This document shows, piece after piece, positions 26,382-63,229 of a DNA stretch of 64,000 nt. Origin of the DNA: Octopus bimaculoides (taxonomy: Eukaryota); assembly GCF_001194135.2 (NCBI RefSeq), contig NC_068988.1, positions 45,402,319 to 45,466,318 on the forward strand, in the 5' to 3' direction. The notes beneath the pieces were generated by a model. It had not been told where the DNA came from. It saw only the letters and a program-made list of their open reading frames with translations, and ran no database searches. The position numbers were made by a program, and so were the translations under genes. Numbering within the stretch: position 1 is the first letter of the stretch; every line of letters begins with the position of its first letter.

Positions 26382-29300
26382 AGTGCATATGAATGTGTTC
26401 ATATGAACATGTGTATATAAATGTATACATTTGCGACTCTGTGCATGTATATCTTTTGTATGTATAGTGAGTGTATGCGTGACTTTGTGTGGATTTATAT
26501 CTGTGTGCATGTGCATATACACACATACATATATGCATATGTACAAATATACATATGCACATATATAGGCATATATATACATATATAGATACATATACAT
26601 AAATATGTAATTTGCATGTGTGTCTCCATATAGATATGTATGTGTATAAACATTTCAATATGTTGCTTTCATTTATGCCTTTGTATAATGTACTTTAATT
26701 ACAATCTCATGTGAATTACCTGCATTTTATATGTTCTTAAATTTATGATGAGTGTCTATTTAACATGTGTATCTCAGTCACGTGCATCCCTTCGTATAAG
26801 TACTAGAATGAAAATTGCTTCCGTGATGCAATCCCAGGTCCAAATATTTTTACGAACAAGGTCGATTTTTTCAATCTAAATATAAGAATAAACACAGGTA
26901 TGATAATAACCATTATCATTATATCTGTACATCAATCAAAGCAGATAAATCCAATAATAGGAAAATAATGTTTCAAATCATTCCAAAATGGGTTTGTTTC
27001 TATGCTCATTCATTTTGGTGATGACGATCAAAGAATTTTCCATTTCTCCCAGCACTGCTTGTTCCTGAGCCTATAATACTTCACAATTTCACCTTTTGGC
27101 TACATGCAGTCAGGCCAACACCAAGATAACATTTGTTTTTGTGCAGATTAACTTTGTATTTAAACCAGTGTCGTGTCTCCATTTTCCCCCTCTAATTTAA
27201 TGTTTTTATTGTACATTTTCACTATTATATATTTCATTTTTACCCTTATTTTCTTTTTATACATACCAGAAACTGAGATTAGCTTTCCATGTTTCAAAAA
27301 TTTACTTGTTTATATGAACTGTTAAGCAAATGACAGTTATTCATCAAACTATTACTCAGTTAATGCAACTATCAGCATTATTCAAATTGATATTACAATT
27401 GTGATTTTCATTACTATTATTATTAATCTGATCATTATTATCAGTCCGTTTCACCTAAAGAAATTCCACCACAACAAATATTAATTAATTCTTTTATTAG
27501 CCACAAGGGCTCACATACATTAGCATTAAATGTCATGGTACAGACGTGGCAAAGACAACACAAAACGAGACAAAGCGTTTTACAGCATGTAAACAATATA
27601 TAACAATAAAAAAATTAAACACATTAAAACTCCCAATAGGGGAGGCACTTTAAAGTCCTCATGAAAAGACCTGCAAAAGCCACAGGTGCTTGATCAACAG
27701 GGCAAGAACCTTCTCTTTTTATTTCTCACAGGTGTATGCTCAGAATTGGTCCTTTCAAACTGGCCATTCTTCCAATATTCATCACAACAAATAATAATGA
27801 CTACATAATCATTATTTCATTCACTGTATTTTCCTATGTAATATCAAAACAACTGGAGATAAAATGACTTTTTGAAATATGAATGAGATAGAGCGTAGGG
27901 TTTCTATCCTCCCTAATATTTTCCTCTCTAATCCAGCAAAATCTTATGTTTTTGCCACTTTAAAGCATAATGCAATATTACACCTATTATAATTGAATTG
28001 GAATAATGCTGTAGTGGAGTTTAATGATAGATTAAGGAATTGAGCTCTAGAATTCTGAAGATATATCAGTTATATATTACATGCATGTGTGTGCTTACAT
28101 GGGGAAACATGGCTTAGTGTTTAGGGCGTTTTAGTTATGATAGTAAGGTTGTGGGTATGATTCCTTGGCTCTGCATTGCTCTGTGTTTCTAGCAAAGACA
28201 CCGTTTTTATGTTGCTCCACTCCTCTCAACTGGCAAGAATGGATGATACTGTGATGGACCTGGCTCCTAATCATGTAGATGGGTTTGGATGATATATACT
28301 CCAGAGAATTTGGAAACTTGCCTTATGAGCCAGTAACTCAGGAAGGAACTTTGATCCGTTGGATACATACACACATACACACACACCCACACATACACAC
28401 ACACAGATATATACACATACACACACACATGCACACACACACAGACACACACATATATATGTACACATGCACACAAGCACACACACACACATATATGTAT
28501 CATATATGGTTAATATTTAACTTTTAATAATACATGACCATTTGACTTTATGGTAAGTATGCATACAATATTATTTTTTCTGTACTAATTACAAAGCTTA
28601 AAACTTTCATCTTTTCCATACATTTGTCATTTCTTCCTTCCAGCCCTTACAATTGAACTATATACGATTTCTCTCCTTGGTATAATGTGTCCCCTATTTC
28701 AATTCATTAACAAGCAAATTTAAGGGTCTTTGACGTTATTGAGGTATTTCAAAACAATTTTGATCGCACTCTATATGAATTGTGGAAACTGCCAAAATCC
28801 TTAGTAAATTAGCAGATGATGTGTTAATTTTTGTTATTTTGCATTTGTTCCATTTGACATGTGATTACATTCGCTGCTGTCATTTCCNNNNNNNNNNNNN
28901 NNNNNNNNNNNNNNNNNNNNNNNNNNNNNNNNNNNNNNNNNNNNNNNNNNNNNNNNNNNNNNNNNNNNNNNNNNNNNNNNNNNNNNNNNNNNNNNNNNNN
29001 NNNNNNNNNNNNNNNNNNNNNNNNNNNNNNNNNNNNNNNNNNNNNNNNNNNNNNNNNNNNNNNNNNNNNNNNNNNNNNNNNNNNNNNNNNNNNNNNNNNN
29101 NNNNNNNNNNNNNNNNNNNNNNNNNNNNNNNNNNNNNNNNNNNNNNNNNNNNNNNNNNNNNNNNNNNNATATATATATATATATATATATATAAGTATAT
29201 GCATATATGCATATAAATATATCTGCATATATGAATATATCTATTTATATATGAGTGTTTGTGTATCTATAAATAAATATATATTTATATATATACACAC

Positions 29301-34498: not shown

Positions 34499-34985
34499 AT
34501 GGAGGAATCCAGTGAAATCTATATGTATATCCAATAGTAATCCAGGTGGAATACAGGTGTGTAGATGAAGAAAAGTGCAGAAACTCCAGGTAGAAGTCCA
34601 AAGTGTGAGATAAAACTGGTGCAACCACGTGAGCATGCAATATCTGGGTGAAATTTACAGAAGACAAAAGATGAAGACAGGTGTATAAACAACAAACAAG
34701 TGTATCAGCTCAGGAAGGTGAGGAAGTCTTTTACATTTCAAGCCTATGCTCTTCAACAGAAAGGAACATGAGGAAATAAACAGCTGCTATGATTGACCGC
34801 TAGCTCCAATAGCTTATTTTTATTCTCTCTGTTCATTTTCTCGTGTTCCTCTGTGTTGAAGAGCATAGGCTCAAAATGTAAGAGACTTACTCACCTATCC
34901 AAGAATTAAACTAATACACCTGTTTGTTGTTTATACACCTGTATTCGTCTTTTGTTTTTCTGTAAATTTCAACTATATATATATN
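34258..34985. mobile_element. Three Penelope-type terminal-repeat copies (+, -, +) each with a minimal hammerhead-ribozyme-like motif
   Basis: Copies about 34258-34420 (+), 34648-34783 (-), 34820-34985 (+); shared motif CTTT-CTG(A/T)TGA-A-GAGC-atag-GCTC-GAAA-(C)GTA-AAAG. Confidence 0.65.
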
Positions 34986-35821
34986 NNNNNNNNNNNNNNN
35001 NNNNNNNNNNNNNNNNNNNNNNNNNNNNNNNNNNNNNNNNNNNNNNNNNNNNNNNNNNNNNNNNNNNNNNNNNNNNNNNNNNNNNNNNNNNNNNNNNNNN
35101 NNNNNNNNNNNNNNNNNNNNNNNNNNNNNNNNNNNNNNNNNNNNNNNNNNNNNNNNNNNNNNNNNNNNNNNNNNNNNNNNNNNNNNNNNNNNNNNNNNNN
35201 NNNNNNNNNNNNNNNNNNNNNNNNNNNNNNNNNNNNNNNNNNNNNNNNNNNNNNNNNNNNNNNNNNNNNNNNNNNNNNNNNNNNNNNNNNNNNNNNNNNN
35301 NNNNNNNNNNNNNNNNNNNNNNNNNNNNNNNNNNNNNNNNNNNNNNATATATAATGTATATATATATATATGTATATATAAATATTCTATACATGTAAAT
35401 AGATATAGATAAATAAATAAATGTTTTATATATATGCTTTATATACATATTATACATGTTTTACTATATGTATGTATTTGTAGCAAAGCAAAAAGGAATG
35501 TTTATCTAATATTTAACAGCATAATCCAATTTGTGTTTCATTAACCACAAATAGCTAACTGTGATATAAAAAAAATCTTATCTGATTGCCTTGCCAAATC
35601 TTCAGAAATTGCATAACTTTCATGATAATCTTTAGAGTATTTATTGAAAAGATGACAGTGTTGTAATGACTACTACAATTTTGGAATTGTCTATCGTAGT
35701 TAAGTTGGTGTCAGCTTATTGATATCAACCATTATAGCAACATCTTCCTGTGCGCACTATTTACTAAATGCTTTATGCGCCACTTAGTGTTGAAAACTTT
35801 GGAAATCTTGCTAATACTGTT

Positions 35822-37640
35822 ATGGCTAATAGCGAAAGGAATATCAGAAAGCACTAATGTTTATCAATGCCACAGAATGTCAGGTTGTCAATAATGACAA
35901 AATAGTGCAAGCGAAAAACGTCTGACTGAGAAGTTTGATGGTCGGAAACATCTGACTAAGAGGTTTAATTGTAGACTTAAAACAGCATGTGACCTAACGA
36001 ATCACAATGAAGAGAAGTTATTAGAAACTAGACGAATATAGCATAAAAAATGAAGATTGTAATCATGGGTTGATGAAGTGCAATCATCAGTGGCTAAGTA
36101 TACAGAAGGCACTCAACAGATTAATGATCAAGAAACAAGCAAACATCTATAATAGCAAAATGAATATTAGAAATAGCTATGAATATACACAGGATTATTT
36201 ACAAAGGCTTAAGAACTGGGTTGGTTTAAATTATTTCAAAATTTTTGGTAATAACACATCAGTTGATTATAAAGCAACCCCTGAATTTCATGGATGAGTC
36301 TGCAAAGATGCAAAGATCACAGCTGATAAAACTTTAACAGCAGAATATGCATAGAATGTTAATGAAACATTATTATTGTGGCTTTAATACCTTGGGGAAA
36401 GATTCACTGCATGAAATATTGACTTCAGGAGTTAAAAATATTAAAGACAAATTAACTGTGCCAGCATATGCTAATACAGCAAAAATCCATAAATATAGAC
36501 TTGCTGTAGTAGGCAAACACCCACATTCTCCCTATTTTAAATCAAGGCATTATTATGGTAACAAAAATGGCGGTGAGCTGGCAGAATCATTACTGCACTG
36601 GGAAAAATGCTTAGTGGCATTTCTTCCAAATTTCCATTCTGAGTTTGAATGTCACTGATGCTGACTTTGCCTTTCATCCTTTCAGGATCAATAGAATGAG
36701 TACTAGTTGAACACTGGCATCGATGTAATCGGCTTAACCCTCCTCCAAGCTTGATGGCCTTGTGGCAAAATTTGATATCATTATTATGGTAACAAAAGTT
36801 ATGGATCATCAGGGGTATTCTTTCTGATTGTTTTCACAAACATTGTGTACCAGAGTCTCATGCTTATTTCAGGGAACAAAAGAGAGTGCTAAGAGCAAGA
36901 TTTTTTTTATTGTTGGACAACTGTTTTGCTGATAATCCAACTGAACTTACTATTAAACAGTATATTTCATTCCAAATGTAGTGTCATTAATTCAGGTATG
37001 TGAGTAAGGCTACTTAACATCATTGAAGACTAAATATAAAGACATTTTCTTGGCATGGTATGCTTGCAGTAATCAACAAAGATATGAGTGTTAAAGTCTT
37101 CCTACAGGTGTACGCTAGAAAATATGGTGCTCTAGCATGGCAACGACCCTTCAGCTGGAAGTAATAAAGAAATAGAACTGTAGTTGTAAATGCATGGGAT
37201 CAAATCACTTAAAAACGCTCTTGTGCATACTTGGCTCAATCTCTGAACTGAAAATATGTTCAATAAGGATGATGGACAAACTGACAATTTTGAAGGATTC
37301 TACGTTTCAAATGAACAAAAAGTATACAATCAGAATTTGTCAGAAAGCCAGTGTAAGTGGATATCAAAGAAGCTTTTAACATCAATAATAACCTTCATTC
37401 CATGACCAATGATGAAATAACTGAAATGGTTCTTAAAAAGTGTATCAGATGATGATTATGCTGTGGGGATCAAGATTGAAGTGTCAACACAATGAAAAAC
37501 ATATCCCCAGATAAAATGGTGAATTTATGTGACAAACTTGTTGAAGGACTAGAACTGCATATGTTCACCTGAGAACAAGTAATCATGACAGTATAAACAA
37601 ATCAAAGAGAGCCTACTTCAACAAAGATTTCATTAATATT
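35822..37640 (+). pseudogene. Decayed pogo/Tigger (Jerky-like) transposase, interrupted by a SINE at about 36566-36780
   Basis: Fragments KRLTEKF, QRLKNWVGLNYFKIFG, KNIKDKLTVPAYANTAKIHKYRLAVVGK, SDCFHKHCVP...LLLDNC, PNVVSLIQ and DKLVEGLE..EQVIMTV match the motif order of Tigger/JRK-type transposases; many stops and frameshifts; TIRs not identified. Confidence 0.75.
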
Positions 37641-38811
37641 CTAGATAACACTAACCTTCTCTACTAACAACATGTCTACTCTAACCATCCTTTTGCTGCT
37701 ATTCACACTTAAGTATTTACACCTTTCTTCTTTGCTGTGATTAGTCTGGCTGAGACTCATTTTATCTTATCTCTTGTACATTGCACACATTCATTTGTCT
37801 TCACTCTAACATCAGTATCATTTCTTCTGGTGTACATTTCAGCATACTAACTTTGATGTTAGTAGAATATCTTAAGTTTTGGATCTGAACAGGTCAACTG
37901 AGCACTAAAGTAGTTACTTGACATGTTCACTACAGCAGCCAAAATCTTATCCCAATATTCCTTGGACAGTTCAAACATCATGTGATAACACATGCAACTG
38001 TATTCCTGTATGAAATAAAGATTGGCAATGTGAACAACACTGAGAAAAGGATGACACACAACAAGTTATTTTAAGAGTAGTTAGAGTTTTATAAAAACCT
38101 TTGCATAGAATTTTGAAAACCAGTTTTACAAAGTCATTATAAAACCATATAATTTAATAATTATTTATGGGAGAAATTCAAAGATGAATGAAGCAGCAAA
38201 ACTTGCTTCAAATATTTCCAATATTCAAATTGTTTTATTTGAGTATTTTCACTTTTTTAATGCAGTCATTAATCAATTATCTTACAGTTGAATATTTAAT
38301 CTTTCTTACTTTCGGTAAGATATGTTGCTTTAGTTTCAGTATGTGATTTATTTATATTCAATATTTTTTAGCATATTTGACTTCTCGACATTTTGGTAGT
38401 CTTAATATTTTAAACACAATAAGTTGCTTTCTTTAGTTTCAATTGATTAAATTAGTCTCCAGAATAATATTCGAATGAAAGTTTTATTTATCTGTCTTCC
38501 ACATTAATGTTAATTTTCTCTTCGATATTGTTTTCTACTTTCATTCTATTTGGTTTTATTTCAGTGAGCCTAAAGTGTTTATTTCAATTCAGAATTATTG
38601 TCAAATTCCAGTTCATTCTTAAATCTAGCAGCAAATTTTGGCTGTTCTTCAAAAATTTCCTGATATAAGCATTAATATTTGAAGTTGCCTCTCTTGAATC
38701 ATACATGCTATTTCAGCTGAGATGTAATTCTTAAATTGTATTGATTCTTCTTCATCTAATAATTTTCTTTTGGCTTAGTTATTCAAAATTTGTTATTTGA
38801 ATTGATGTGTC

Positions 38812-39520
38812 ATTTGATTCCACTGATTTAAGTACGTCATTTGATTCTGCTGATCAAAGTATGGACATTCGATATTGCAGATCCATGCATGTCATCTAAT
38901 GCCATAGATCTATGCTTGTATTTTAATGCAATTGATCCACATATTTCATTTGATTCTGTTGGTCCTTACAAAGCATTGGATGATCTTGATCCATGCATAT
39001 CACTAAATTTCACTAATACAAGCATGGCATATGAATCTACTAATACACATATGCCATGAGATGGCACTGATTGTTTAGAATTATTTCTTACACTTGATGC
39101 TACAGCAATCCATCTTGCTTAATGCCTCTGGTCCATGAATATCATTTGATGCTGTTAATTCAGGCATATTATTTGATGTCAAATATCTATGCTTGCAGTT
39201 TGTGCTTGACGTTCCATATATATTACTTGGTACCATTGATGCATGCATATTATTTGATTTCACTAATCCATGCAAATCTTTTACTTCTCATGATCCTTGC
39301 AAATACTTTGGTACCTCTGATTGAAGTTTATCATCTGATTCTGCTGATTTATGTTTCTCATTAGATTTTGCAGATCTTATTTCACTGGATTTCATAGATT
39401 CATTCACAATACTGGATTTCATTGACTCAATTAATGATCTCTGCATTACACTGGATTGTCCTATTGCTAATGTTTCATTAAATTCTGTTGAATCACTTGA
39501 GTGAACCAGCTCAAATGTTG
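38812..39520 (-). repeat. Degenerate 27-bp tandem repeat (about 25 units) that translates as decayed nonapeptide repeats on the minus strand
   Basis: Plus-strand 27-mers in register: atttgattccactgatttaagtacgtc / attcgatattgcagatccatgcatgtc / atctaatgccatagatctatgcttgta / attggatgatcttgatccatgcatatc; ORFs 39288-39536 and 39081-39275 share one frame separated by a single TGA. Confidence 0.75.
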
Positions 39521-39615
39521 CATTTAGTTTTATCAATTTGTAACTGATGTGAGATGCATCTCAGGATAATGAATGCCTCTTATTCTCTGATTCTTCAGGC
39601 AGTATCATTTATTTT

Positions 39616-42600
39616 CTACATTGCTGTTGCTTCTTTAATTTCTGAGAAATTAATATTTGGTTCAAATTTTCTTTCTGCTTTTGACATAATATTTGCTCCA
39701 AAGGAATTCATCTGGCCAAGCTTACTGGCTGATTGAAACAAATTATTCAGTCTCTGTAAAGTATGCGGCAGCAGTTTGTTCCGTGCAGTAAAGTTGTGGG
39801 GAAATTTATTACCTGTCGTTGGTGTGATGTTTAGCTTCATCTCTGTCTCTGGTTTCAAAGTGGATGAAATTGGTTGTTCAAACAAAAGGCCATATTTACG
39901 TAAGGGTTTACACACATTGCTGGAATTGGTATCCATTTTTGGTTTTAACCAAGCATTTGATTTAAATGTGATTGCTTGTTTTTGAGCCTTCTCTTCTAAA
40001 CAGGTCTTACTGTGTTGACACTGTTCCAAAATATTTTTTACCTTAAAATTATTTTCCCATTCAGAAGTCAATATTAGATTATTAATTGTCTTTAGTTCAC
40101 TAACAGTTTTTCTCCTCTGTATATTTTTTGGTGTCAATATTTGATTCATTTCTTCGATATTATTTTTTTTAGACAGATATTTTTGTGTTTTTGTAATCTG
40201 TGGGCCAGAAAATGCTTTTCTATGTAATATAGCTTTATTTCTAACAAAATTTGGGGGTCGCAAAGACACTTTTGGCTCCAGTTTATCTACCAATTCATAT
40301 GAATGGGTTAAATTAAATGATGATTGTATACTTTGCCTCCTTTTCTCAGGACCATATTTAAATGTTTCTGATTTAAGATCTGCAGAAACTATCGTCTTCC
40401 TCAAGTTATTTTTATGAAATTGTTTCGTTGATTTAAATAGATTCTTTGAGTCTAGTGAATCAAACATCATTACCAATTCTAATACATTATTTTGCATAGC
40501 TAGTTTCTGTTCTCTTTTTGTAACCATTTGTTCATATGTTAACAGAGTTCGAGGAGTATTTCTTGGAGCAAATATATCATCTAGTTGAAATAGTTTATCA
40601 CTTGCAATCATAAAGTTTTGTGGAAATCCTCCTCTTGTCATCACTGAATGGCAAGCATCAAACATTGAGTAATGTAAATCTGTCATTCTTTGGCAAGGGA
40701 AGTGAATAGTATTTGTCGTTGAATTTGGAACAATGCTCCCACTTGGATTCCATTTTTTGTTTGAAACAATTTCAAGTTTTGCTAGATTTTTAGGCTGAAG
40801 TTGCAATGGACCATGAGAAAACCTACCTGTAAGAATAGTCTTTAATTTAAATTCTTTCTTTTCACCTGGAATAATTTTATTTACTTGTTCAATACCAGGA
40901 GGCTTCTGAACTTCACTTGATTTAAAATTAGATCTCAATTCCAATTTTCCTTTTGTCTGTGATGCTATTCTTGGCTCACTCATAATATGCAACTGAAGGC
41001 TTTTCTTTCTTCCACCGGAAATCCTTGGCTGGGGAGCATTTCTTTCATATAGTGCATTTCGCAAATTACAGTTTTCTTTCCACAGAACTCTCTGTTTTGG
41101 ATTAGAGAGGTTCTTTATTTTATCTAGAGAGTTTTTAATTTGGGGAGCTATTTCAGACATAGATGAAGATTTTAGTTTTACAGAAACATTATCTTTAATT
41201 GCATACATTGAACTGCATTGGCTGCTTGTCCTCAGTATGCTTATCATCTCAGGTGGTTTGTCTGGTTCAGTTAGACTAGTTGAATGATGTGATATATTTT
41301 CTTTATCTTTACGTTCTGGTGCATACATTTCTTCTCTTGATACTGAATTATTCCTAGCCAAAAATGTTTTTACTTTTTCAGAAATAAATGGTGAATTTCT
41401 GAAAGTGTTTGACTGAAGAAAATTCCTTATTTTTTGCAGTTCAATTTGGTCTTCATTTTTTTTCTTTTCCCAAAAGCTCCAGTTTAGCTCTTCTTCTCTC
41501 TGATCAAATGCATTCTCTGTTGTACTTATGTAATTTGGTACCTCTTCTGATTTCAAGAAATTCTCCTTACTTTGACTAGGAGCTCCTTCAGATATACATT
41601 TTATTCCAAGAGAAACTTCTGCTGCGCATTCATTTTCTATTCTAAATGTAATATTTGATCGAACTAAGTTTTCTGATTTGATGTCATTTGTTTGCTTTTT
41701 AAAATTTCTTAGTACTTGAGATGTCTGTTGCTTAGATTTCAAGTTATTTACATAGTCTTCCTTAACTGAACTTTGAGACTTTTTCTTATTGATTTGTTTT
41801 TGAGAATTCCTTCCCTCATCTGCTTGCATTTGTTCCACTGTATCTGTAGTTCTACCCCCTGTCATTTTTTGGGTTGCATATTTTAATTTACTCCTGTTTC
41901 TTTGTTTTAGCTGAGGTGCAATTTCTATTCTGGTTGGAGATGTAAAATTCACTTTCTTCTTACTTTTGATGCTAACTTTTGATTTAACAGAAGAATTTAG
42001 AGTTCTCTTTATTGACTTTATTGATGTGTAATTGTTTGTGGATTTCAGGTTAGCAGTCTTTTCTGATATTGATTTGTTGTCTGGTGGACATGGTACCAGT
42101 GGAATTAGTAAATATTTGTGGCTGTATGGATACTCATCAGGAAGTGGTTTCATATGTACAAGCCAAAGTTTAGAGTCATATTTATCCTTTGGTTTTAATC
42201 TGTTCATTACATCATTAACATTACAAACTTCTAGAGCTTCTGATGTATCAGTAGGAGTATCTCGTTTGTTATTAACTTTCAATGGCAATGGAAGGGTATT
42301 GATACCAGTGGCTTCCAAAGCATCTGTTGACTTGGCAAGAGTGACATATGTAGTATTAACATTCTTCAAAGTTTTATCATTTCGTTGAAGAATATCATCG
42401 CCCCTGACATTTTTGCTGACACCTTTGGCTTCCAAAGTTTCTGAAATATTGATAGGATGAGCATTTTCCATTGCAGTATTATTCAAAGGTTTATCATTTC
42501 TGTCAAAAGTATTTTCCATTCTTACAATATCATGGACATCACTGACATTCAGACCTGAAGAGTTGATGAGAGTGATAAACTCAGTACTAAAATTTTTTGT

Positions 42601-44556
42601 TGATTTTTCATTTGTTTGAAAATTATTTTCTTTTCTTACTGTGTTTCTCAGTTTCGTTTGAATGGCTGGGTTAACAGAATTTCTCTTTGGATTAGTTTTA
42701 CCAGAAGCTGGGATGCTATAACCAACAGAAGTTCTTTCACTACTACATGCAGAATTACCTGCTGTTATTTTAGCTCTGGCTTTATCATTAGAACTTGCTG
42801 TAGTTTTACTTTTAGATACAATTTTACTTTCGGGTACAAATGAGCCTCCCAATCCAGTTTCATCTCTAGCTGCAGATTTACCTCCAGATGAAGATTTGCC
42901 TCTAGATGTAGATTTGCCTCCAGATGTAGATTTACCTCTAGATATAGATTTATAGCTATATGGAGATTTATCTCTAGATATATATCTATCTCTAGATGTA
43001 TCACGATGTTCAAAAGATATTTTACTTATAGGTGTACTTCTTATAACAGTTTTAAAACTTTCTGCTGGAGTGTAACCTACAGCTGAAGCTTTATGCTTAT
43101 CTGTAGATTTGCATTTAGTAGTAGCTTTACTTCCAGTTACATTTTTTACTTTAAACTTTATTCTATTTTCCCTTCCTTCTGGTGTATCACCAAACACACT
43201 TTCATTTCTGCCTGTTGATTTTCTTCCTGGATCACTAGTACTTCCAACTCTTGTTTTATTACCAAATGCACTTTTACTTTCCAGCACAGACTTACTGGCA
43301 AATGAAGTTGTAATTCCAGCTGCTGTGGTTTTACCTTTCTCTATGTTTTTACTGCTGGGTGTGCTTTTTCTACCTACTAAGGATTTTGTGCAATGCTTAG
43401 TTTTATCAAGAGATGTGGTTGAACTGACAACACTAGTTTTAATCTTACTTCCAAATACAATTACACTTTCAAGTAAAGCTTTATCATTGTGTTTTATATT
43501 AGATGTTCTTTTACTTCTAGGTGTAGAAGTGGATGCAACTACAGTTTTATCTCTACATTCAGTACTGCAACCAAGTTTACACCTATTGCCCAGTTCAGTT
43601 TTGCCTCCTAAAGTAGTTCTTAGTTTACCTTTGCATGGAATTCCACCTCCTTTTATTTTACATCTTTCTGGGTTTGGTTTACCTACAAATTCAGTTTTCT
43701 CATCAGACATAATTTCCCCTTCATCTATAATTTTATCTTTAATTAATGCTATACCACTAACTACAGTTTTGCCACTAATTGAAGTTTTATCACCAGTTAA
43801 TATTTTCCCATCATATTCAGCTCCAGCACCTTCTGTATTATTACTTTCAAGCATACTTTTATGGTATGGCTCTGGTTGGCATTCTTCAGTCTTTCTGATA
43901 TCCATTCTATTGTTGCTTATAAATGTTGATTCTTTTCTTAAAGGACCTTTATTAAAAGATGTGATTATGCTGCCAGATGATTCTTCTAATTTAGAAGAGG
44001 ATCTATTTCTTACATCCTGATATGCATTTAATGTATTCTTAAAATGTAATGACTTCTCAGTCTGAAAATGTTCTTGCATGCAGGTTGTGGCTCCTAATTT
44101 TGATACATTCTCTTGGTAAAGCATTTCATCTGATTTAAGTGCAGCCATACTTGTTAGTGTTTTTTCTAATTCCAAGGCAAATTTTGATGCTATTTCAGCC
44201 TTCAGATTGAAAGTATTCTTTAGTTCATCATCATTCTTTATAGTAATCCTCATCTGAATCATTGGGATATTATGCTTTTTCTCTTCTTGGAAAGCAACGT
44301 TAGATTCAAATCCATGCCTGGCAGCTTTTTCGTTAACAGTTTCCTTTGTGTTTTTCACAGGAACCCTTGGTTTACATAAAGTTTTCCATTGTTGAGGTCC
44401 AATGCATCTTTGCAATGACAAGGGATTTGACTTTGAAGTATGCCTTAAATTCCACCTGTTCCATTGTTTGAATTGCAAAAATTTCAGTCTTGATGCCAGT
44501 TGAGATATGAAATCCTTCTCAGGGTTTAACCAAGAATAAGACTTATGCCTGTCCAT
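39616..44556 (-). CDS. Large single-exon ORF (1646 aa), Lys/Ser/Thr/Asn-rich, probably largely disordered protein of unknown family with a central hexapeptide-repeat region
   Basis: 4941 bp without a stop in very AT-rich DNA where other ORFs are under about 150 aa; non-microsatellite sequence; in-frame TGA 9 codons upstream of the ATG (44581-44583); TAG at 39616-39618. No recognisable domain. Confidence 0.85.
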   Translation of the reverse strand: MDRHKSYSWLNPEKDFISQLASRLKFLQFKQWNRWNLRHTSKSNPLSLQRCIGPQQWKTLCKPRVPVKNTKETVNEKAARHGFESNVAFQEEKKHNIPMIQMRITIKNDDELKNTFNLKAEIASKFALELEKTLTSMAALKSDEMLYQENVSKLGATTCMQEHFQTEKSLHFKNTLNAYQDVRNRSSSKLEESSGSIITSFNKGPLRKESTFISNNRMDIRKTEECQPEPYHKSMLESNNTEGAGAEYDGKILTGDKTSISGKTVVSGIALIKDKIIDEGEIMSDEKTEFVGKPNPERCKIKGGGIPCKGKLRTTLGGKTELGNRCKLGCSTECRDKTVVASTSTPRSKRTSNIKHNDKALLESVIVFGSKIKTSVVSSTTSLDKTKHCTKSLVGRKSTPSSKNIEKGKTTAAGITTSFASKSVLESKSAFGNKTRVGSTSDPGRKSTGRNESVFGDTPEGRENRIKFKVKNVTGSKATTKCKSTDKHKASAVGYTPAESFKTVIRSTPISKISFEHRDTSRDRYISRDKSPYSYKSISRGKSTSGGKSTSRGKSSSGGKSAARDETGLGGSFVPESKIVSKSKTTASSNDKARAKITAGNSACSSERTSVGYSIPASGKTNPKRNSVNPAIQTKLRNTVRKENNFQTNEKSTKNFSTEFITLINSSGLNVSDVHDIVRMENTFDRNDKPLNNTAMENAHPINISETLEAKGVSKNVRGDDILQRNDKTLKNVNTTYVTLAKSTDALEATGINTLPLPLKVNNKRDTPTDTSEALEVCNVNDVMNRLKPKDKYDSKLWLVHMKPLPDEYPYSHKYLLIPLVPCPPDNKSISEKTANLKSTNNYTSIKSIKRTLNSSVKSKVSIKSKKKVNFTSPTRIEIAPQLKQRNRSKLKYATQKMTGGRTTDTVEQMQADEGRNSQKQINKKKSQSSVKEDYVNNLKSKQQTSQVLRNFKKQTNDIKSENLVRSNITFRIENECAAEVSLGIKCISEGAPSQSKENFLKSEEVPNYISTTENAFDQREEELNWSFWEKKKNEDQIELQKIRNFLQSNTFRNSPFISEKVKTFLARNNSVSREEMYAPERKDKENISHHSTSLTEPDKPPEMISILRTSSQCSSMYAIKDNVSVKLKSSSMSEIAPQIKNSLDKIKNLSNPKQRVLWKENCNLRNALYERNAPQPRISGGRKKSLQLHIMSEPRIASQTKGKLELRSNFKSSEVQKPPGIEQVNKIIPGEKKEFKLKTILTGRFSHGPLQLQPKNLAKLEIVSNKKWNPSGSIVPNSTTNTIHFPCQRMTDLHYSMFDACHSVMTRGGFPQNFMIASDKLFQLDDIFAPRNTPRTLLTYEQMVTKREQKLAMQNNVLELVMMFDSLDSKNLFKSTKQFHKNNLRKTIVSADLKSETFKYGPEKRRQSIQSSFNLTHSYELVDKLEPKVSLRPPNFVRNKAILHRKAFSGPQITKTQKYLSKKNNIEEMNQILTPKNIQRRKTVSELKTINNLILTSEWENNFKVKNILEQCQHSKTCLEEKAQKQAITFKSNAWLKPKMDTNSSNVCKPLRKYGLLFEQPISSTLKPETEMKLNITPTTGNKFPHNFTARNKLLPHTLQRLNNLFQSASKLGQMNSFGANIMSKAERKFEPNINFSEIKEATAM
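42685..43809 (-). repeat. Degenerate 18-bp / hexapeptide tandem repeat inside the large ORF (aa about 250-624)
   Basis: Protein parses into 6-aa units (GKILTG DKTSIS GKTVVS ... SKSVLE SKSAFG NKTRVG ... GKSTSG GKSTSR GKSSSG GKSAAR); DNA units such as agatttgcctctagatgt are nearly identical at about 42890-43000. Confidence 0.8.
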
Positions 44557-44941
44557 TAGACCAAGTGTTTTCGTTGTGCTTCAAGACAACATCTTGCGTA
44601 AAATACATCTTTTTCTTTTTTTATTGATATTGATGCTGTCTAAACTGCAGCTGATGCTGGTCTTGGTGCTTCTGTTCTTTATGCAACTTTGTTGTCTTCA
44701 GTTTGTCCTCCCAGGTACAGGAAAATTCTGTGGATGGAGTTAGCAAAATTAACAAATATGTGTGTATTGCATTTATGTGTGTGTGTGTGGGGGGGGGGTA
44801 TTAATTCCATAACGGCTACGTCTGATGAGTGCAGGTTTACATTATTGGACTGTTACTTAACACTCTGTTGTGAAACCGATTGGTAAGATCGGTTGTAATG
44901 GATATATAAATACTGTACACTTTGATTAATATATTTATATA

Positions 44942-46129
44942 CAGGTGTTGGACAAAATAATGGAAACACCTAGCATCATAGAATCATAATTTTGAAATAT
45001 CTATAAAACCATCAAAAGCTTGTTTATTTATTTATTTTTTTTATTCATTATTAGTGTTGCTTAATATGTTTTGCTAAAATTGCTCTTACTTTTCAGATAT
45101 CATGAGGAAAAGGTAATTAAAATTCATTAAAATGACAGATCTATCGGACTTTCAAAGAGGCCAAATTGCTGGTGCTCGTACGGCAGGTGCTAGTGTAATG
45201 AAAACAGCCGAAATGTTTGGTGTATCAAGAAGTACTGTCTCAAAAGTAATGACAGTCTTTGAGGAAGAGGGAAAAAACCTCTTCATCGAAACAAAACACC
45301 AGAAGAAAACCAAAACTTTCAGATAGGGACCATTGGACTCTTACACGAATTGTTAGAAAGGATCACAAAAGGCTGCAATCAGAAAACCGCAACTTTCAAA
45401 AACAAATGTTGCAAAGCATTTAGAGTGGAGTAAAAACCTACAGAATTGGTCCCTAGAGCAGTGGAAGAATGTTATTTTCTTGGACAAGTCAGTCTTTACC
45501 TTATCCCTGACCACCGGCCGAGTATACGTGTAGAGACAGCCAAAAGAAGCATTTGAACCAGATTGCCTTCTTCCAGCTGTTAAACATGGAGGAGGATCTG
45601 TGATGATCGGGGGGGGGGGGCTAGGATCTGTGATGATCTGGGGGAAATCCGCCAGCCCAATGGTTTCCTTTCATGGCAGAATTAATAGTCAAGAATATTT
45701 AAGCATTTTATCTGATCAAATTCATCTTATAGTTGCAGAACTGTTTTTAGAGGGAAAAACAATCTTGCAGGATGATAATATGCCAATTCACACAGCTAAA
45801 GTTGTTAGTGAATAGCACGAGGAACATTCTAATGAAGTTGAACATCTTATCTGGCCACCACAGTCCTCAGATCTCAATATTATTGAACATTTATGGTGCA
45901 TTTTAGAAAAACAAGTAAGGAGTCTATATCCTCCACCATCATCACTACAAGAACTTAAGACTGTTTTAGCTGAAGAATGGACAAAAATTCCTTTGGAAAC
46001 AAATCAAACTTTGTACGAGTCCATACCTCATAGAATTCAAGCTGTAATTACTGCTAAGGGCAGTCTTACTCCATATTGAAATAAATTTGTTTGAAATTTT
46101 AAGGTGTTTCCATTATTTTGTCCAACCCC
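44942..46129 (+). mobile_element. Tc1-like DNA transposon, DD36E (Incomer-like), non-autonomous
   Basis: TA|CAGGTGTTGGACAAAATAATGGAAACACCT left end, matching inverted copy at about 46102-46129; transposase remnant from ATG 45132 to TGA 46079. Confidence 0.9.
45132..46079 (+). pseudogene. Disrupted DD36E Tc1 transposase
   Basis: MTDLSDFQRGQIAGARTAGASV N-terminus; QDDNMPIH...WPPQSSDLNIIEHLW with 36 residues between catalytic D and E; ends AKGSLTPY*; frameshifts, stops, an internal deletion near 45370 and a small duplication near 45590-45640. Confidence 0.88.
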
Positions 46130-52558: not shown

Positions 52559-54170
52559 GGGGAAAATAAAAATTTGTACGTGTCAAAATTCTTTATTTAT
52601 TTAATTTCTAATAAGCATAAATGGGATATACCAAAACTATATTTGCATACACATGCATAAACTAAGAATATGCAAAAGAAACTAAAAAAAAAGAAGTTAC
52701 TAAGGAATTTATATTCAATTATAAATATTTAGGGGCGAAAAAATTATTTGTATAGAACATAAATAACCGATAATTCTGATTTAATAGTTCGTAGCATAAG
52801 CATTTTTCAGTTCCACTTCAACCAATCTCTTCTTGTTGTTCTTAATCAATGACTCGCATCATTCTTTAGGAATTTTTACCCATTCTTCTTGACAAATTTT
52901 CTTCAAATCTGGAATGCATGTTGGGGCTCTTGAATGAATTTTAATTTTCAAATAACGCCACAAATTTTCAATGGGGTTCAGGCCAGGTGACTGGCTTGGC
53001 CATTCTAGTAATTTTGTATTGTGATCGACAATCCATATTTTGGTAGACTTCGCCATGTGCTTAGGGTCATTATCCTGTTGTAAAACCCACCCTTCACGAA
53101 GCTGGAGCTTTTTTACAGAGTCCCATAAATTATTGTTTAAAAATATTTTGGTACATCTCTGCATTCATTCTACCATCTATCACATGTAAATTGCCAGTAC
53201 CATTTGCAGAGAAGCACCTCCACACCATGATGTTGCCACCTCCAAACTTTATGGAAGGAATTGTGTTTTTCGGTGAATAAGCGGTATCATCTTTCCTCCA
53301 AACATGGCTACGCAAATTTCGTCCAAACAATTCAATTTTCAACTCATCTGTCCATAGAACTTTTTCCCAGAATGTATCAGATTTATCTTTATGTTCATGA
53401 ACAAATTTTAAATGGGCATCTCTATGCCTTTTAGTCAACAGTGGAGTTTTTCTAGGAGAGCATGACTTCGGTTCATTCCCATGAAGTTCATTGCTGATTG
53501 TTCGTAGTGTAACACTAGTCCCTGAAGCTAACAAATCTTCTTGAAACTCTTTTCTGGTGATTATTGCATTTTTTTCGATTCTTTGCTTCCTTTTTCTTAA
53601 AAATCTAGGGGAAATCTTGCGTGGTGCACTGGATCTTATTCTGTCTTCAACAGTTCCCGATTTTTTATATCTTTGAATAAATGAAGATATGGTAGAAAAT
53701 GGAATACAAAGGGTCTCTGATATTTTCCTGAAACTTTTACCTGTTTTCCATTATTCAATAAGTAAGTTTTTTACTGAATTTGTGAGTTCTTTACTTTTCG
53801 CCATTATTATGACACTACTTTATGTTGTCTCAGTGCTGAATGAAGAAGCTAGCATTTTGACACTTAAAAATGACCACTGATAAGATTATTGGAACAAACG
53901 AGAAAGTTCTAGTAAAAAAAAAATTATTTTAACAGTGTTTTGTGGCATAGAAACTCATAAATTTATTCTGTACGAATACTTTTTTCACCCCTAAATATTT
54001 ATAATTGTATATAAATTCATTAGTTACTATAATTTATTAGTTTCTTTTGCATATTCTTAGTTTATGCATGTGTATGCAAATATAGCATTGGTATAACCCA
54101 TTTATGTTCATTAGAAATTAAATAAATTAAATAAAGAATTTTGACACGTACGAATATTTATTTTCTCCCA

Positions 54171-55278: not shown

Positions 55279-55288
55279 NNNNNNNNNN

Positions 55289-62511: not shown

Positions 62512-63229
62512 TTACAGCCACATGGTTTCCAGCTCTACAGCCACATGTTTTCCGATTCTACAGCCACATGGTTTCCAGTTCTACAGCCACATGGTTTCCA
62601 GTTCTACAGCCACATGGTTTCCGGTTCTACAGCCACATGGTTTCCGGTTCTACAGCCACATGGTTTCCAGTTCTACAGCCACATGNNNNNNNNNNNNNNN
62701 NNNNNNNNNNNNNNNNNNNNNNNNNNNNNNNNNNNNNNNNNNNNNNNNNNNNNNNNNNNNNNNNNNNNNNNNNNNNNNNNNNNNNNNNNNNNNNNNNNNN
62801 NNNNNNNNNNNNNNNNNNNNNNNNNNNNNNNNNNNNNNNNNNNNNNNNNNNNNNNNNNNNNNNNNNNNNNNNNNNNNNNNNNNNNNNNNNNNNNNNNNNN
62901 NNNNNNNNNNNNNNNNNNNNNNNNNNNNNNNNNNNNNNNNNNNNNNNNNNNNNNNNNNNNNNNNNNNNNNNNNNNNNNNNNNNNNNNNNNNNNNNNNNNN
63001 NNNNNNNNNNNNNNNNNNNNNNNNNNNNNNNNNNNNNNNNNNNNNNNNNNNNNNNNNNNNNNNNNNNNNNNNNNNNTTTTCCGATTCTACAGCCACATGG
63101 TTTCCAGTTCTACAGCCACATGGTTTCCAGTTCTACAGCCACATGGTTTCCGGTTCTACAGCCACATGGTTTCCGGTTCTACAGCCACATGGTTTCCGGT
63201 TCTACAGCCACATGGTTTCCGGTTCTACA
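62512..63229 (+). repeat. 23-bp minisatellite (ctacagccacatggtttcc(a/g)gtt)n spanning an N-gap
   Basis: Near-identical units on both sides of gap 62686-63076. Confidence 0.95.

What the first reader, a model, noticed from the sequence alone, without database searches (positions are those of the whole stretch)
39616..44556. Giant intronless orphan ORF (1646 aa) in an otherwise repeat-only landscape
Seen: 4.94 kb with no stop in AT-rich DNA, in-frame stop 9 codons upstream of the ATG, no RT/transposase/integrase motifs, K/S/T/N-rich with several internal repeat systems. Inference: a real, probably lineage-restricted, basic and mostly disordered protein. Large, fast-evolving single-exon repeat proteins in animals are often germline/sperm or structural proteins, but nothing here proves that. 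Best candidate in the window for an undescribed gene.
Basis: partly seen in the sequence, partly recalled or inferred. Interest (0 to 1): 0.75.

Follow-up and report, generated by a model that had tools for sequence, protein, structure and literature searches.

The report
Giant single-exon orphan protein gene
A 4.9-kb uninterrupted reading frame in a repeat-filled stretch of a probable octopus chromosome is almost certainly a real, single-copy gene for a 186-kDa basic, largely unstructured protein with no detectable relative in the searched databases; this makes it an unusually large example of an ordinary class, the lineage-restricted "orphan" gene.

Summary
Window 39616-44556 (minus strand) is a 1646-aa ATG-to-TAG frame, 1654 codons stop-to-stop, with a TGA nine codons upstream. 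The other two sense frames carry 117 and 219 stops, and shuffles of the same DNA give at most 168 open codons. The ORF and its 3' flank are unique in the 2.34-Gb genome. No family, solved structure or relative was found: Pfam, NCBIfam, PHROGs and PDB were empty, as were an exhaustive phmmer run (aa 447-1646) against 1.84 billion representatives, three word-indexed searches of 5.8 billion clusters, and viral and metagenome contigs. The protein is basic (pI 9.8) and K/S/N/T-rich (39%), has no signal peptide or TM segment, and folds with mean pLDDT 34-35. It contains a 6-aa array, a 6-aa-periodic zone (aa 240-630) and a roughly 39-aa repeat in 3-4 copies. About 160 nt past the stop lies a unique array of about 25 degenerate 27-nt units, broken by stops and frameshifts. 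It is probably a decayed C-terminal repeat domain that now sits in the 3' UTR. Best reading: a real, taxon-restricted gene for a disordered basic scaffold protein. This is a new member of a known kind, of moderate interest.

The parts
39616..44556 (-). Coding region: ATG (44556) to TAG (39616-39618), 1646 aa, uninterrupted
   Evidence: There are 0 internal stops against 117 and 219 in the other sense frames, and shuffles give at most 168 open codons. It is unique in the genome.
44557..44727 (-). Inferred 5' leader. It starts at an acceptor-like site (ccatccacag|AATTTT at 44727) and holds the in-frame TGA at 44581-44583 and two upstream ATGs (44608 out of frame; 44592 in frame, closed after 3 codons). 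The main ATG has a weak context (C at -3, G at +4).
   Evidence: Its role as a UTR is inferred, not shown.
42667..43839 (-). aa 240-630: a K/S/T/G-rich zone with degenerate 6-residue periodicity. It has the strongest codon periodicity in the ORF.
   Evidence: Identity autocorrelation peaks at lags 6, 12 and 18 with z = 7.3, 7.8 and 5.7. Chi-square per 100 codons is 38-87.
42874..43000 (-). 18-nt / 6-aa tandem array of about 7 copies, encoding ...SRGKSTSGGKSTSRGKSSSGGKS...
   Evidence: family D3.
42178..42645 (-). aa 638-793: 3-4 diverged copies of a roughly 39-aa (117-nt) unit
   Evidence: Diagonal scores of 58 and 47 at lags 77 and 38, against a shuffled maximum of 46. A DNA repeat has 117-nt spacing (family D11).
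41413..41541 (-). aa 1006-1048: an acidic predicted helix, the longest run of residues with pLDDT above 50 in the protein (50-64). The local block has pI 5.5.
38808..39455 (-). Array of about 25 degenerate 27-nt (9-codon) units beginning about 160 nt past the stop. The first 14 units read in one frame (+1 relative to the ORF) with 2 stops. After that come two frameshifts and more stops. It is probably a decayed former C-terminal repeat domain that now lies in the 3' UTR.
   Evidence: (families D1, D2). It is unique in the genome and is not derived from ORF sequence.
38200..39615 (-). Inferred 3' UTR. The sense-strand A-rich skew continues from the ORF and ends sharply at about 38,200. Several AATAAA signals lie at 38583, 38560, 38488, 38352 and 38239.
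   Evidence: The transcript end is inferred, not shown.

Best explanation
This is a genuine, single-copy protein-coding gene. Its whole coding region is one 4.94-kb exon (window 44556 to 39616, minus strand).

Inferred transcript: an exon beginning near 44727-44800, and a 3' UTR of about 1.0-1.4 kb ending near 38,200-38,600.

Product (shown): a 186-kDa, strongly basic (pI 9.8, net charge about +113), low-hydrophobicity protein. It has no signal peptide, no membrane segment and no recognisable domain. It is built from basic K/S/T-rich blocks broken by acidic blocks (aa 100-300 and aa 1000-1100).

Origin (inferred): parts of it grew by expansion of short in-frame tandem units of 18 nt and 117 nt. 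A further array of 27-nt units downstream was probably once coding too and was cut off by a stop, so the protein was formerly longer. Its sequence evolves too fast for relatives to be recognised, or it is genuinely young, which makes it a taxon-restricted orphan.

Mechanism (inferred, not shown): it most likely acts as an intracellular, intrinsically disordered scaffold. Its many dispersed lysines would bind a polyanion (nucleic acid or chromatin, or acidic tubulin tails) multivalently, regulated by its dense Ser/Thr.

My probabilities:
- real coding gene under selection for an open frame: about 0.85;
- no homologue outside octopods: about 0.65;
- the polyanion-binding scaffold mechanism specifically: about 0.3.
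For: Shown:
- Open frame far beyond chance, with strong three-base periodicity.
- The ORF and its 3' flank are each unique in 2.34 Gb.
- No Pfam, NCBIfam, PHROGs or PDB match.
- No relative in an exhaustive phmmer search of 1.84e9 representatives, three searches of 5.8e9 clusters, viral contigs or metagenome contigs.
- pI, charge blocks, no TM segment or signal peptide, and the disordered side of the charge-hydropathy plot.
- AlphaFold2 mean pLDDT 35 and 34.
- Repeat systems.

Internal control. The adjacent 27-nt array of about 250 codons carries roughly 4 stops and 2 frameshifts along its best frame path. The 1646-codon ORF carries none. If the flank was once coding, decay at the same rate would predict about 39 lesions in the ORF.

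Compositional transcript-like domain: A-rich sense strand from about 44,800 to about 38,200, ending after AATAAA signals.

Context: species- and octopod-restricted genes are a documented class, with neural and male-reproductive expression biases (PMC7656900).
Against: - No expression, orthologue or dN/dS evidence was obtainable.
- The collections may withhold records of the same or very near genomes, so absence of close orthologues proves nothing at that range.
- Codon periodicity is weak in aa 1-100, 801-900, 1101-1200 and 1501-1646.
- The start codon has a poor context, with two upstream ATGs within 52 nt.
- A Tc1/mariner remnant lies 388 nt upstream, where a promoter might be.
- The amino-acid composition is close to what A-rich DNA alone would give, so little of the sequence may be constrained.
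- There is no classical NLS and no known nucleic-acid- or tubulin-binding motif. The proposed mechanism rests on physicochemistry only.
- Single-sequence AlphaFold2 gives low confidence for any orphan, folded or not.
Confidence: 0.6

Rival explanations
1. The ORF is the giant, fast-evolving, disordered exon of a larger multi-exon gene. Its conserved, family-defining exons lie elsewhere, possibly outside the 64-kb window, and coding exons splice into and/or out of the ORF at internal sites.
For: - An acceptor-like site lies 171 nt upstream.
- The first 100 codons show no codon periodicity, and the ATG has a weak context with two upstream ATGs.
- One internal acceptor-like site (42554) and one donor-like site (40826) exist.
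- Coding-like sequence continues past the stop in another frame.
Against: - The frame is closed 9 codons upstream of the ATG, and all three frames close within about 60 nt after the stop. Any joining would therefore have to use internal sites, and almost none score well.
- No non-TE domain appears in any other open frame of the window.
- The protein collection holds a gene product of exactly this 1646-aa sequence. Some annotation therefore calls it complete, though who made that call, and with what support, is not visible.
Confidence: 0.15
2. It is a dying gene. The protein has already lost its C-terminal repeat domain and perhaps its promoter to a transposon insertion, and the remaining ORF is open only because constraint was lost very recently.
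For: - A decayed 27-nt array lies just past the stop.
- A Tc1/mariner remnant lies 388 nt upstream of the ATG.
- Periodicity is weak at both ends of the ORF.
- The composition is close to the neutral expectation for this base composition.
Against: - There are no stops or frameshifts in 1654 codons of DNA where about 8% of random codons are stops, while the adjacent 250 codons have accumulated about 6 lesions. The ORF has clearly been protected for longer than the flank has been decaying.
- The mariner copy is itself old and degraded, with a broken transposase frame and a degenerate right end. The gene has therefore coexisted with it.
Confidence: 0.1
3. It is a relic or domesticated ORF of a mobile element or an endogenous viral insertion of unknown type, which would explain why it is intronless, AT-rich and compositionally distinct from its flanks.
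For: - A 6.6-kb A-rich compositional island has fairly sharp edges.
- The coding region is uninterrupted.
- It lies in a TE-rich neighbourhood.
- A second, broken coding-like stretch lies next to it.
Against: - It is single copy.
- It has no RT, transposase, integrase, capsid or any other domain.
- It has no relative in IMG/VR contigs or in 1.84e9 protein representatives.
- No terminal repeats or target-site duplications bracket the island.
- There is no poly(A) tract at the 3' edge.
Confidence: 0.05
4. It is a chance open frame, an assembly artefact or contamination.
For: None beyond the low sequence complexity of some segments.
Against: - Shuffles give at most 168 open codons, against 1654 observed.
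- The ORF contains no N runs; the nearest are at 34985-35346 and 55279-55288.
- It is embedded in a 97.8-Mb contig between host-type repeats.
Confidence: 0.01

Closest known systems
Species- and octopod-restricted ('novel') genes of octopus genomes (Whitelaw et al. 2020, PMC7656900; Albertin et al. 2015, cited from my own knowledge)
   Same: It has no orthologue detectable outside the lineage and sits in a repeat-rich genome. This is the class the locus belongs to. The reported expression biases (neural for species-specific genes, male reproductive tissue for octopod-specific genes) are the natural first places to look.
   Different: Orphans and de novo genes are typically short. This one is 1646 aa on one exon, with signs of having been longer. 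Whether it is species-, genus- or octopod-wide could not be determined here.
Giant-exon, intrinsically disordered, basic scaffold proteins of animals, such as Ki-67 (MKI67), SRRM2 and MAP1B (from my own knowledge; an analogy only)
   Same: A multi-kilobase single coding exon. High positive charge and Ser/Thr richness. Internal tandem repeats. Almost no predicted fold. Rapid sequence evolution. Action, in those proteins, by multivalent electrostatic binding to chromatin, RNA or microtubules.
   Different: There is no sequence, domain or motif match to any of them: no FHA or PP1-binding module, no RS dipeptide tracts (R is only 5.2%), and no KXGS tubulin-binding repeats. This is a statement about how it may work, not about membership.
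Coding minisatellite-expanded proteins (repeat-driven gene growth; a general concept, from my own knowledge)
   Same: In-frame tandem units of 18, 117 and (downstream) 27 nt, all multiples of three, make up or adjoin a substantial part of the coding region.
   Different: Most of the ORF (aa 1-240 and 800-1646) shows no significant repeat structure, so repeat expansion cannot account for the whole gene.

Membership tests
Transposable-element ORF (LINE/LTR RT, DDE transposase, integrase) | A catalytic domain recognisable by profile (RVT, rve, DDE, endonuclease) | tested here: not met
   Pfam gives 0 families at E<=1 over all 1646 aa. The same library did detect the DDE_3 and HTH transposase fragments elsewhere in the window, so the method works on this DNA.
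Transposable-element ORF (LINE/LTR RT, DDE transposase, integrase) | Multiple copies in the host genome | tested here: not met
   The protein search of the 2.34-Gb genome finds only the locus itself. The DNA search finds the locus itself plus one 63-nt match at 79% identity.
Transposable-element ORF (LINE/LTR RT, DDE transposase, integrase) | Terminal repeats (LTR or TIR) or target-site duplications bracketing the unit | tested here: not met
   No repeat pair brackets 38.2-44.8 kb. The only TIR pair (44944-44971 / 46102-46129) belongs to a separate mariner element upstream.
Processed retrogene | An intron-bearing parent gene elsewhere in the genome; a 3' poly(A) tract; flanking direct repeats | tested here: not met
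   There is no paralogue, no poly(A) tract at the 3' edge and no flanking direct repeats.
Taxonomically restricted (orphan) protein-coding gene | No homologue detectable outside a narrow lineage by sensitive sequence search | tested here: met
   Only self-hits, and no hits. Two caveats apply. Orthologues above 50% identity could also be hidden inside the query's own representative cluster, although (90% clusters) shows none of comparable length.
Taxonomically restricted (orphan) protein-coding gene | Evidence that it is a gene: an ORF maintained by selection, transcription and translation | tested here: inconclusive
   ORF maintenance is strongly supported (and the contrast with the decayed flank). 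Transcription and translation cannot be tested with these tools.
De novo gene (born from non-coding DNA) | A syntenic non-coding orthologous sequence in outgroup species | not testable with these tools
Intrinsically disordered protein | Low mean hydropathy with high net charge, and no confidently predicted fold | tested here: met
   Mean normalised hydropathy is 0.409, below the boundary of 0.438, and 48 of 64 windows fall on the disordered side. Mean pLDDT is 35.3 and 34.1, with 1 residue at or above 70. These are proxy measures only.
Secreted mucin-like or structural repeat protein | An N-terminal signal peptide and Pro/Thr/Ser-rich tandem repeats | tested here: not met
   The N-terminal 30 residues are hydrophilic (mean KD -0.80). 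The most hydrophobic 19-mer scores only 1.18. Pro is 4.6%.
Linker-histone, protamine-like sperm nuclear basic proteins | A winged-helix linker-histone domain or Arg-rich tracts | tested here: not met
   There is no Pfam match. R is 5.2%, and there is no run of 4 or more K/R.
Tau/MAP2/MAP4 microtubule-associated proteins | Tubulin-binding repeats containing KXGS | tested here: not met
   There are 0 KXGS motifs and no Pfam Tubulin-binding match.

The most novel reading that the evidence does not exclude
A 186-kDa protein-coding gene arose within the octopod lineage, essentially from scratch, out of A-rich non-genic or minisatellite DNA. It grew by in-frame expansion of 18-, 27- and 117-nt units and is still being remodelled (its 27-nt C-terminal array has already been lost). 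That would make it one of the largest de novo or near-de novo animal genes known. The evidence does not exclude this: there is no homologue anywhere, the composition is close to that expected from the local base composition, repeat-derived segments are present, and the locus is unique.
Probability: 0.12. Interest if true: 0.7.

Novelty: new member of a known kind. Interest (0 to 1): 0.33.

Why it matters
Lineage-restricted genes are common in cephalopod genomes and are repeatedly proposed as sources of cephalopod novelties, but few have been characterised.

This one stands out in two ways:
- Size. At 1646 aa on one exon it is roughly ten times the length of a typical orphan.
- A built-in record of its own evolution. 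It has in-frame tandem units inside the ORF and a decayed 9-codon array just past the stop.

With sister-species genomes it would be a tractable case for asking whether very large orphans come from runaway divergence of an old disordered protein or from repeat-driven birth. As it stands, it is an uncharacterised but unsurprising kind of gene. No function can be assigned beyond physicochemical inference.

Tried and rejected
1. Family and structure look-ups found nothing: Pfam, NCBIfam, PHROGs and PDB sequences.

2. Homologue searches found only the query itself or nothing:
- whole length, word-indexed;
- exhaustive phmmer of aa 447-1646;
- the C-terminal 397 aa and the N-terminal 446 aa as stand-alone queries, to catch short gene models or transcript fragments;
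- IMG/VR and JGI metagenome contigs.

3. Structure: two single-sequence AlphaFold2 runs covering the whole protein gave pLDDT 34-35. I did not run fold search, because matches to such models are meaningless.

4. The idea that the coding-like 3' flank is a duplicate of ORF sequence, or a genomic repeat, is rejected.

5. A short intron joining the ORF to the downstream 27-nt array is rejected. By hand, the only GT...AG combination near the stop leads straight into a stop, and the PWM scan found no good donor there.

6. Retrogene, TE and EVE signatures (terminal repeats, TSDs, a poly(A) tail, paralogues) were not found.

7. Linear-motif scan: no classical NLS, KXGS, SxIP, LxCxE or CxxC. The few KEN, RxxL and RVxF-like matches are at chance level for this composition.

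8. The Rfam scan of the window found nothing.

9. Wider chromosomal context (100 kb either side) and a same-genome codon-usage reference from HSP70 and actin loci could not be done. The fetch from genomes and the genome search were closed at that point.
Full report

Yes. On the minus strand, window 44556 to 39616 reads ATG...TAG with 1646 sense codons. The stop-to-stop frame is 1654 codons.

The sense strand is 41% A, 26% T, 17% G and 16% C. About 8% of random codons would therefore be stops.

| Measure | Value |
|---|---|
| Internal stops in the ORF frame | 0 |
| Stops in the other two sense frames | 117 and 219 |
| Stops in the three antisense frames | 107, 37 and 121 |
| Longest open run in 300 shuffles of the same DNA | mean 79 codons, maximum 168 |

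The apparently competing open frames of 250-350 codons elsewhere in the window coincide with runs of N at 15049-15701, 20468-21048, 28888-29168, 34985-35346 and 62686-63076. They are not sequence. The longest genuine open frame outside the ORF is 206 codons, a Tc1/mariner transposase fragment.

Three-base compositional periodicity is strong over most of the ORF. Chi-square per 600 nt is 19-139, against 1-12 in the flanks. Per 100 codons it reaches 87. It is weak in codons 1-100, 801-900, 1101-1200 and 1501-1646.

**2. What is around it?**

The other 126 non-trivial open frames of the window were scanned against Pfam. The only real domains are Tc1/mariner ones: DDE_3 in two frames, HTH_Tnp_Tc3_2 and HTH_SB. 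Rfam finds nothing. The 'repeat-only landscape' is therefore a fair description.

A decayed mariner copy with 28-nt terminal inverted repeats (44944-44971 and 46102-46129, 96% complementary) lies 388 nt upstream of the ATG.

On the sense strand, an A-over-T skew (A 0.36-0.49) begins at about 44,800. It runs through the ORF, continues about 1.4 kb past the stop, and ends abruptly at about 38,200. Several AATAAA signals precede that edge, at 38583, 38560, 38488, 38352 and 38239.

A good acceptor-like site (ccatccacag|AATTTT) lies at 44727, 171 nt before the ATG. Inside the ORF only one acceptor-like site (42554) and one donor-like site (40826) pass a simple scan.

All three frames close within about 60 nt after the TAG. 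The frame is also closed 9 codons before the ATG. I therefore read the coding region as a single exon. The 5' leader possibly begins at 44727, perhaps preceded by a non-coding exon. The 3' UTR is about 1.0-1.4 kb. The transcript ends are inferred from composition and consensus signals only.

**3. The 3' flank**

From 39,455 to about 38,800 the minus strand is a tandem array of about 25 degenerate 27-nt units.

Stacked in register, the first 14 units read in one frame, +1 relative to the ORF, as 9-residue repeats (ESMKSSIVN / ESMKSSEIR / SAKSNEKHK / SAESDDKLQ ... LVKSNNMHA ... LTASNDIHG). That frame has only two stops. The register then shifts frame twice, and more stops appear.

The array is unique in the genome and is not a copy of ORF sequence.

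Three features point to a former C-terminal repeat domain that was cut off by a stop and has since drifted as UTR:
- a period that is a multiple of three;
- the same S/K/N-rich flavour as the ORF;
- a stop-poor frame.

I cannot exclude a non-coding minisatellite.

About 6 disabling lesions have accumulated in about 250 codons of flank, against none in 1646 codons of ORF, where about 39 would be expected at the same rate. That argues for continuing selection on the ORF.

**4. Copy number and homology**

A six-frame protein search of the window's own 2.34-Gb genome finds only the locus itself. A DNA search finds the locus itself plus one insignificant 63-nt match. It is therefore neither a TE family nor a recent duplicate or retrocopy.

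| Search | Result |
|---|---|
| Pfam (E<=1) | none |
| NCBIfam | none |
| PHROGs | none |
| PDB sequences | none |
| Word-indexed search, whole protein, 5.8 billion clusters | self only |
| Exhaustive phmmer, aa 447-1646, 1.84 billion representatives | self only |
| C-terminal 397 aa alone (admits shorter gene models) | none |
| N-terminal 446 aa alone | none |
| IMG/VR viral contigs | none |
| JGI metagenome contigs | none |

Two caveats apply:
- The tools state that records of the same or a very near genome may be left out.
- In the 50%-identity representative library, close orthologues could hide behind the query's own cluster.

What is shown is 'no relative beyond close kin', not 'species-specific'.

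The collection does contain a called gene product identical to the 1646-aa ORF. Some annotation already treats it as a complete protein.

**5. The protein**

Basic properties:
- 185.6 kDa, pI 9.8.
- K 12.0, S 11.2, N 8.0, T 8.0, L 7.3, E 6.7 %.

Charge and hydropathy:
- K+R 282 against D+E 169; fraction of charged residues 0.27; net charge per residue +0.07.
- Basic blocks alternate with acidic or neutral ones (aa 100-300 and 1000-1100).
- No hydrophobic N-terminus. The most hydrophobic 19-mer has mean KD 1.18, so there is no signal peptide or TM helix.
- Mean hydropathy lies on the disordered side of the charge-hydropathy boundary, as do 48 of 64 windows.

Structure prediction:
- Single-sequence AlphaFold2 over aa 1100-1646 and aa 1-1100 gave mean pLDDT 35.3 and 34.1.
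- A few isolated helices appear. The longest run above pLDDT 50 is aa 1006-1048, at pLDDT 50-64.
- This is consistent with disorder. It is not proof, because there is no alignment to inform the model.

Repeats:
- an 18-nt array encoding S[RG]GKST about 7 times;
- a broader 6-residue periodicity over aa 240-630;
- a roughly 39-aa unit in 3-4 copies at aa 638-793;
- the rest shows no significant self-similarity.

The overall composition is close to what the local base composition would give. S, E, P, A and G are in excess, and I, Y and H are depleted. That is the signature of a weakly constrained, disorder-biased sequence.

The motif scan found no classical NLS, KXGS, CxxC, SxIP or LxCxE.

**6. 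How it most likely works**

Shown: an open, single-copy, domain-less, basic, low-hydropathy ORF with in-frame repeats.

Inferred: it is transcribed as an mRNA of about 6.5 kb and translated into an intracellular, intrinsically disordered protein.

The most defensible mechanistic guess is a multivalent electrostatic scaffold. Many dispersed lysines would bind a polyanion: nucleic acid or chromatin, or the acidic tails of tubulin. Acidic blocks would provide intramolecular or partner contacts. The dense Ser/Thr would offer phospho-regulation. This is how Ki-67, SRRM2 and MAP1B-type proteins work (from my own knowledge).

It fails every membership test I could run for those families. This is a 'works like' statement, with probability about 0.3. 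The absence of an NLS weakens the nuclear version of it.

**7. Rivals**

- **Giant exon of a bigger gene (0.15).** The weak start context, two upstream ATGs, the upstream acceptor and the unperiodic first 100 codons favour it. The closed frames at both ends and the scarcity of internal splice-like sites count against it.
- **A gene in early decay (0.10).** The lost 3' array and the upstream mariner favour it. Zero lesions in 1654 codons count against it.
- **TE or viral relic (0.05).** The compositional island favours it. Single-copy status, the absence of any domain, of viral relatives and of terminal repeats count against it.
- **Chance or artefact (0.01).** Refuted.

**8. Comparison with what is known, and novelty**

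Octopod genomes are known to carry many species- and clade-restricted genes. Reported expression biases are neural for species-specific genes and male-reproductive for octopod-specific ones (PMC7656900). This locus is a new member of that known kind.

It is unusual mainly in its length and in carrying visible traces of repeat-driven growth and of C-terminal loss.

The most novel reading not excluded is a very large de novo or repeat-born gene. I give it about 0.12.

**9. Limits**

- No cephalopod comparison genomes, transcriptomes or expression data are reachable with these tools.
- The fetch from genomes and the genome search closed mid-session. I could not inspect the chromosome beyond the window or build a same-genome codon-usage reference.
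It fits the genome size and contig count from my own knowledge of the O. bimaculoides assembly, but no tool verified it.

Noticed in passing
window 44944-46129: A decayed Tc1/mariner element with 28-nt terminal inverted repeats (44944-44971 / 46102-46129, 96% complementary) and broken DDE_3 transposase frames at 45534-46076 (+). It sits only 388 nt upstream of the ORF's ATG, where a promoter would be expected.
   Followed up: partly
window 52862-53750 (-): A second Tc1/mariner transposase remnant, with HTH and DDE pieces in two adjacent frames. It contains the longest genuine open frame in the window outside the giant ORF (206 codons).
   Followed up: partly
window 15049-15701, 20468-21048, 28888-29168, 34985-35346, 62686-63076 (plus 10-nt runs at 21274, 21635, 55279, 55439 and 63373, and a 94-nt run at 16670-16763): Runs of N (assembly gaps or masked stretches). 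They create spurious 'ORFs' open in all six frames and depress the apparent GC (0.185 at 14-16 kb). Any ORF-length comparison in this window must ignore them.
   Followed up: yes
window 43076-44020 (+): A 314-codon stop-free frame antisense to the 6-aa-periodic part of the ORF. One antisense frame has only 37 stops over the whole ORF, against 107 and 121 in the other two. This is most simply a by-product of the sense codon structure, not a second gene.
   Followed up: partly
window 39616-44556 compared with its flanks: CpG observed/expected is 0.17 in the ORF and 0.22 in the 3' flank, against 0.43-0.45 in the DNA 5' of the ATG, and 0.13 further downstream (36000-38199). This could reflect germline methylation of a transcribed body, or just codon and base composition.
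   Followed up: no
window 44770-44800 (-): A C8 run followed by an (AC)n microsatellite lies immediately upstream of the acceptor-like site at 44727, at the point where the A-rich skew domain begins.
   Followed up: no
window 42140-42165 (-), aa 798-826: The only Pro/aromatic-rich hydrophobic island in the protein (WLVHMKPLPDEYPYSHKYLLIPLVPCPP) sits right after the 39-aa repeats. It is a candidate short interaction motif, but no known motif class matched.
   Followed up: no
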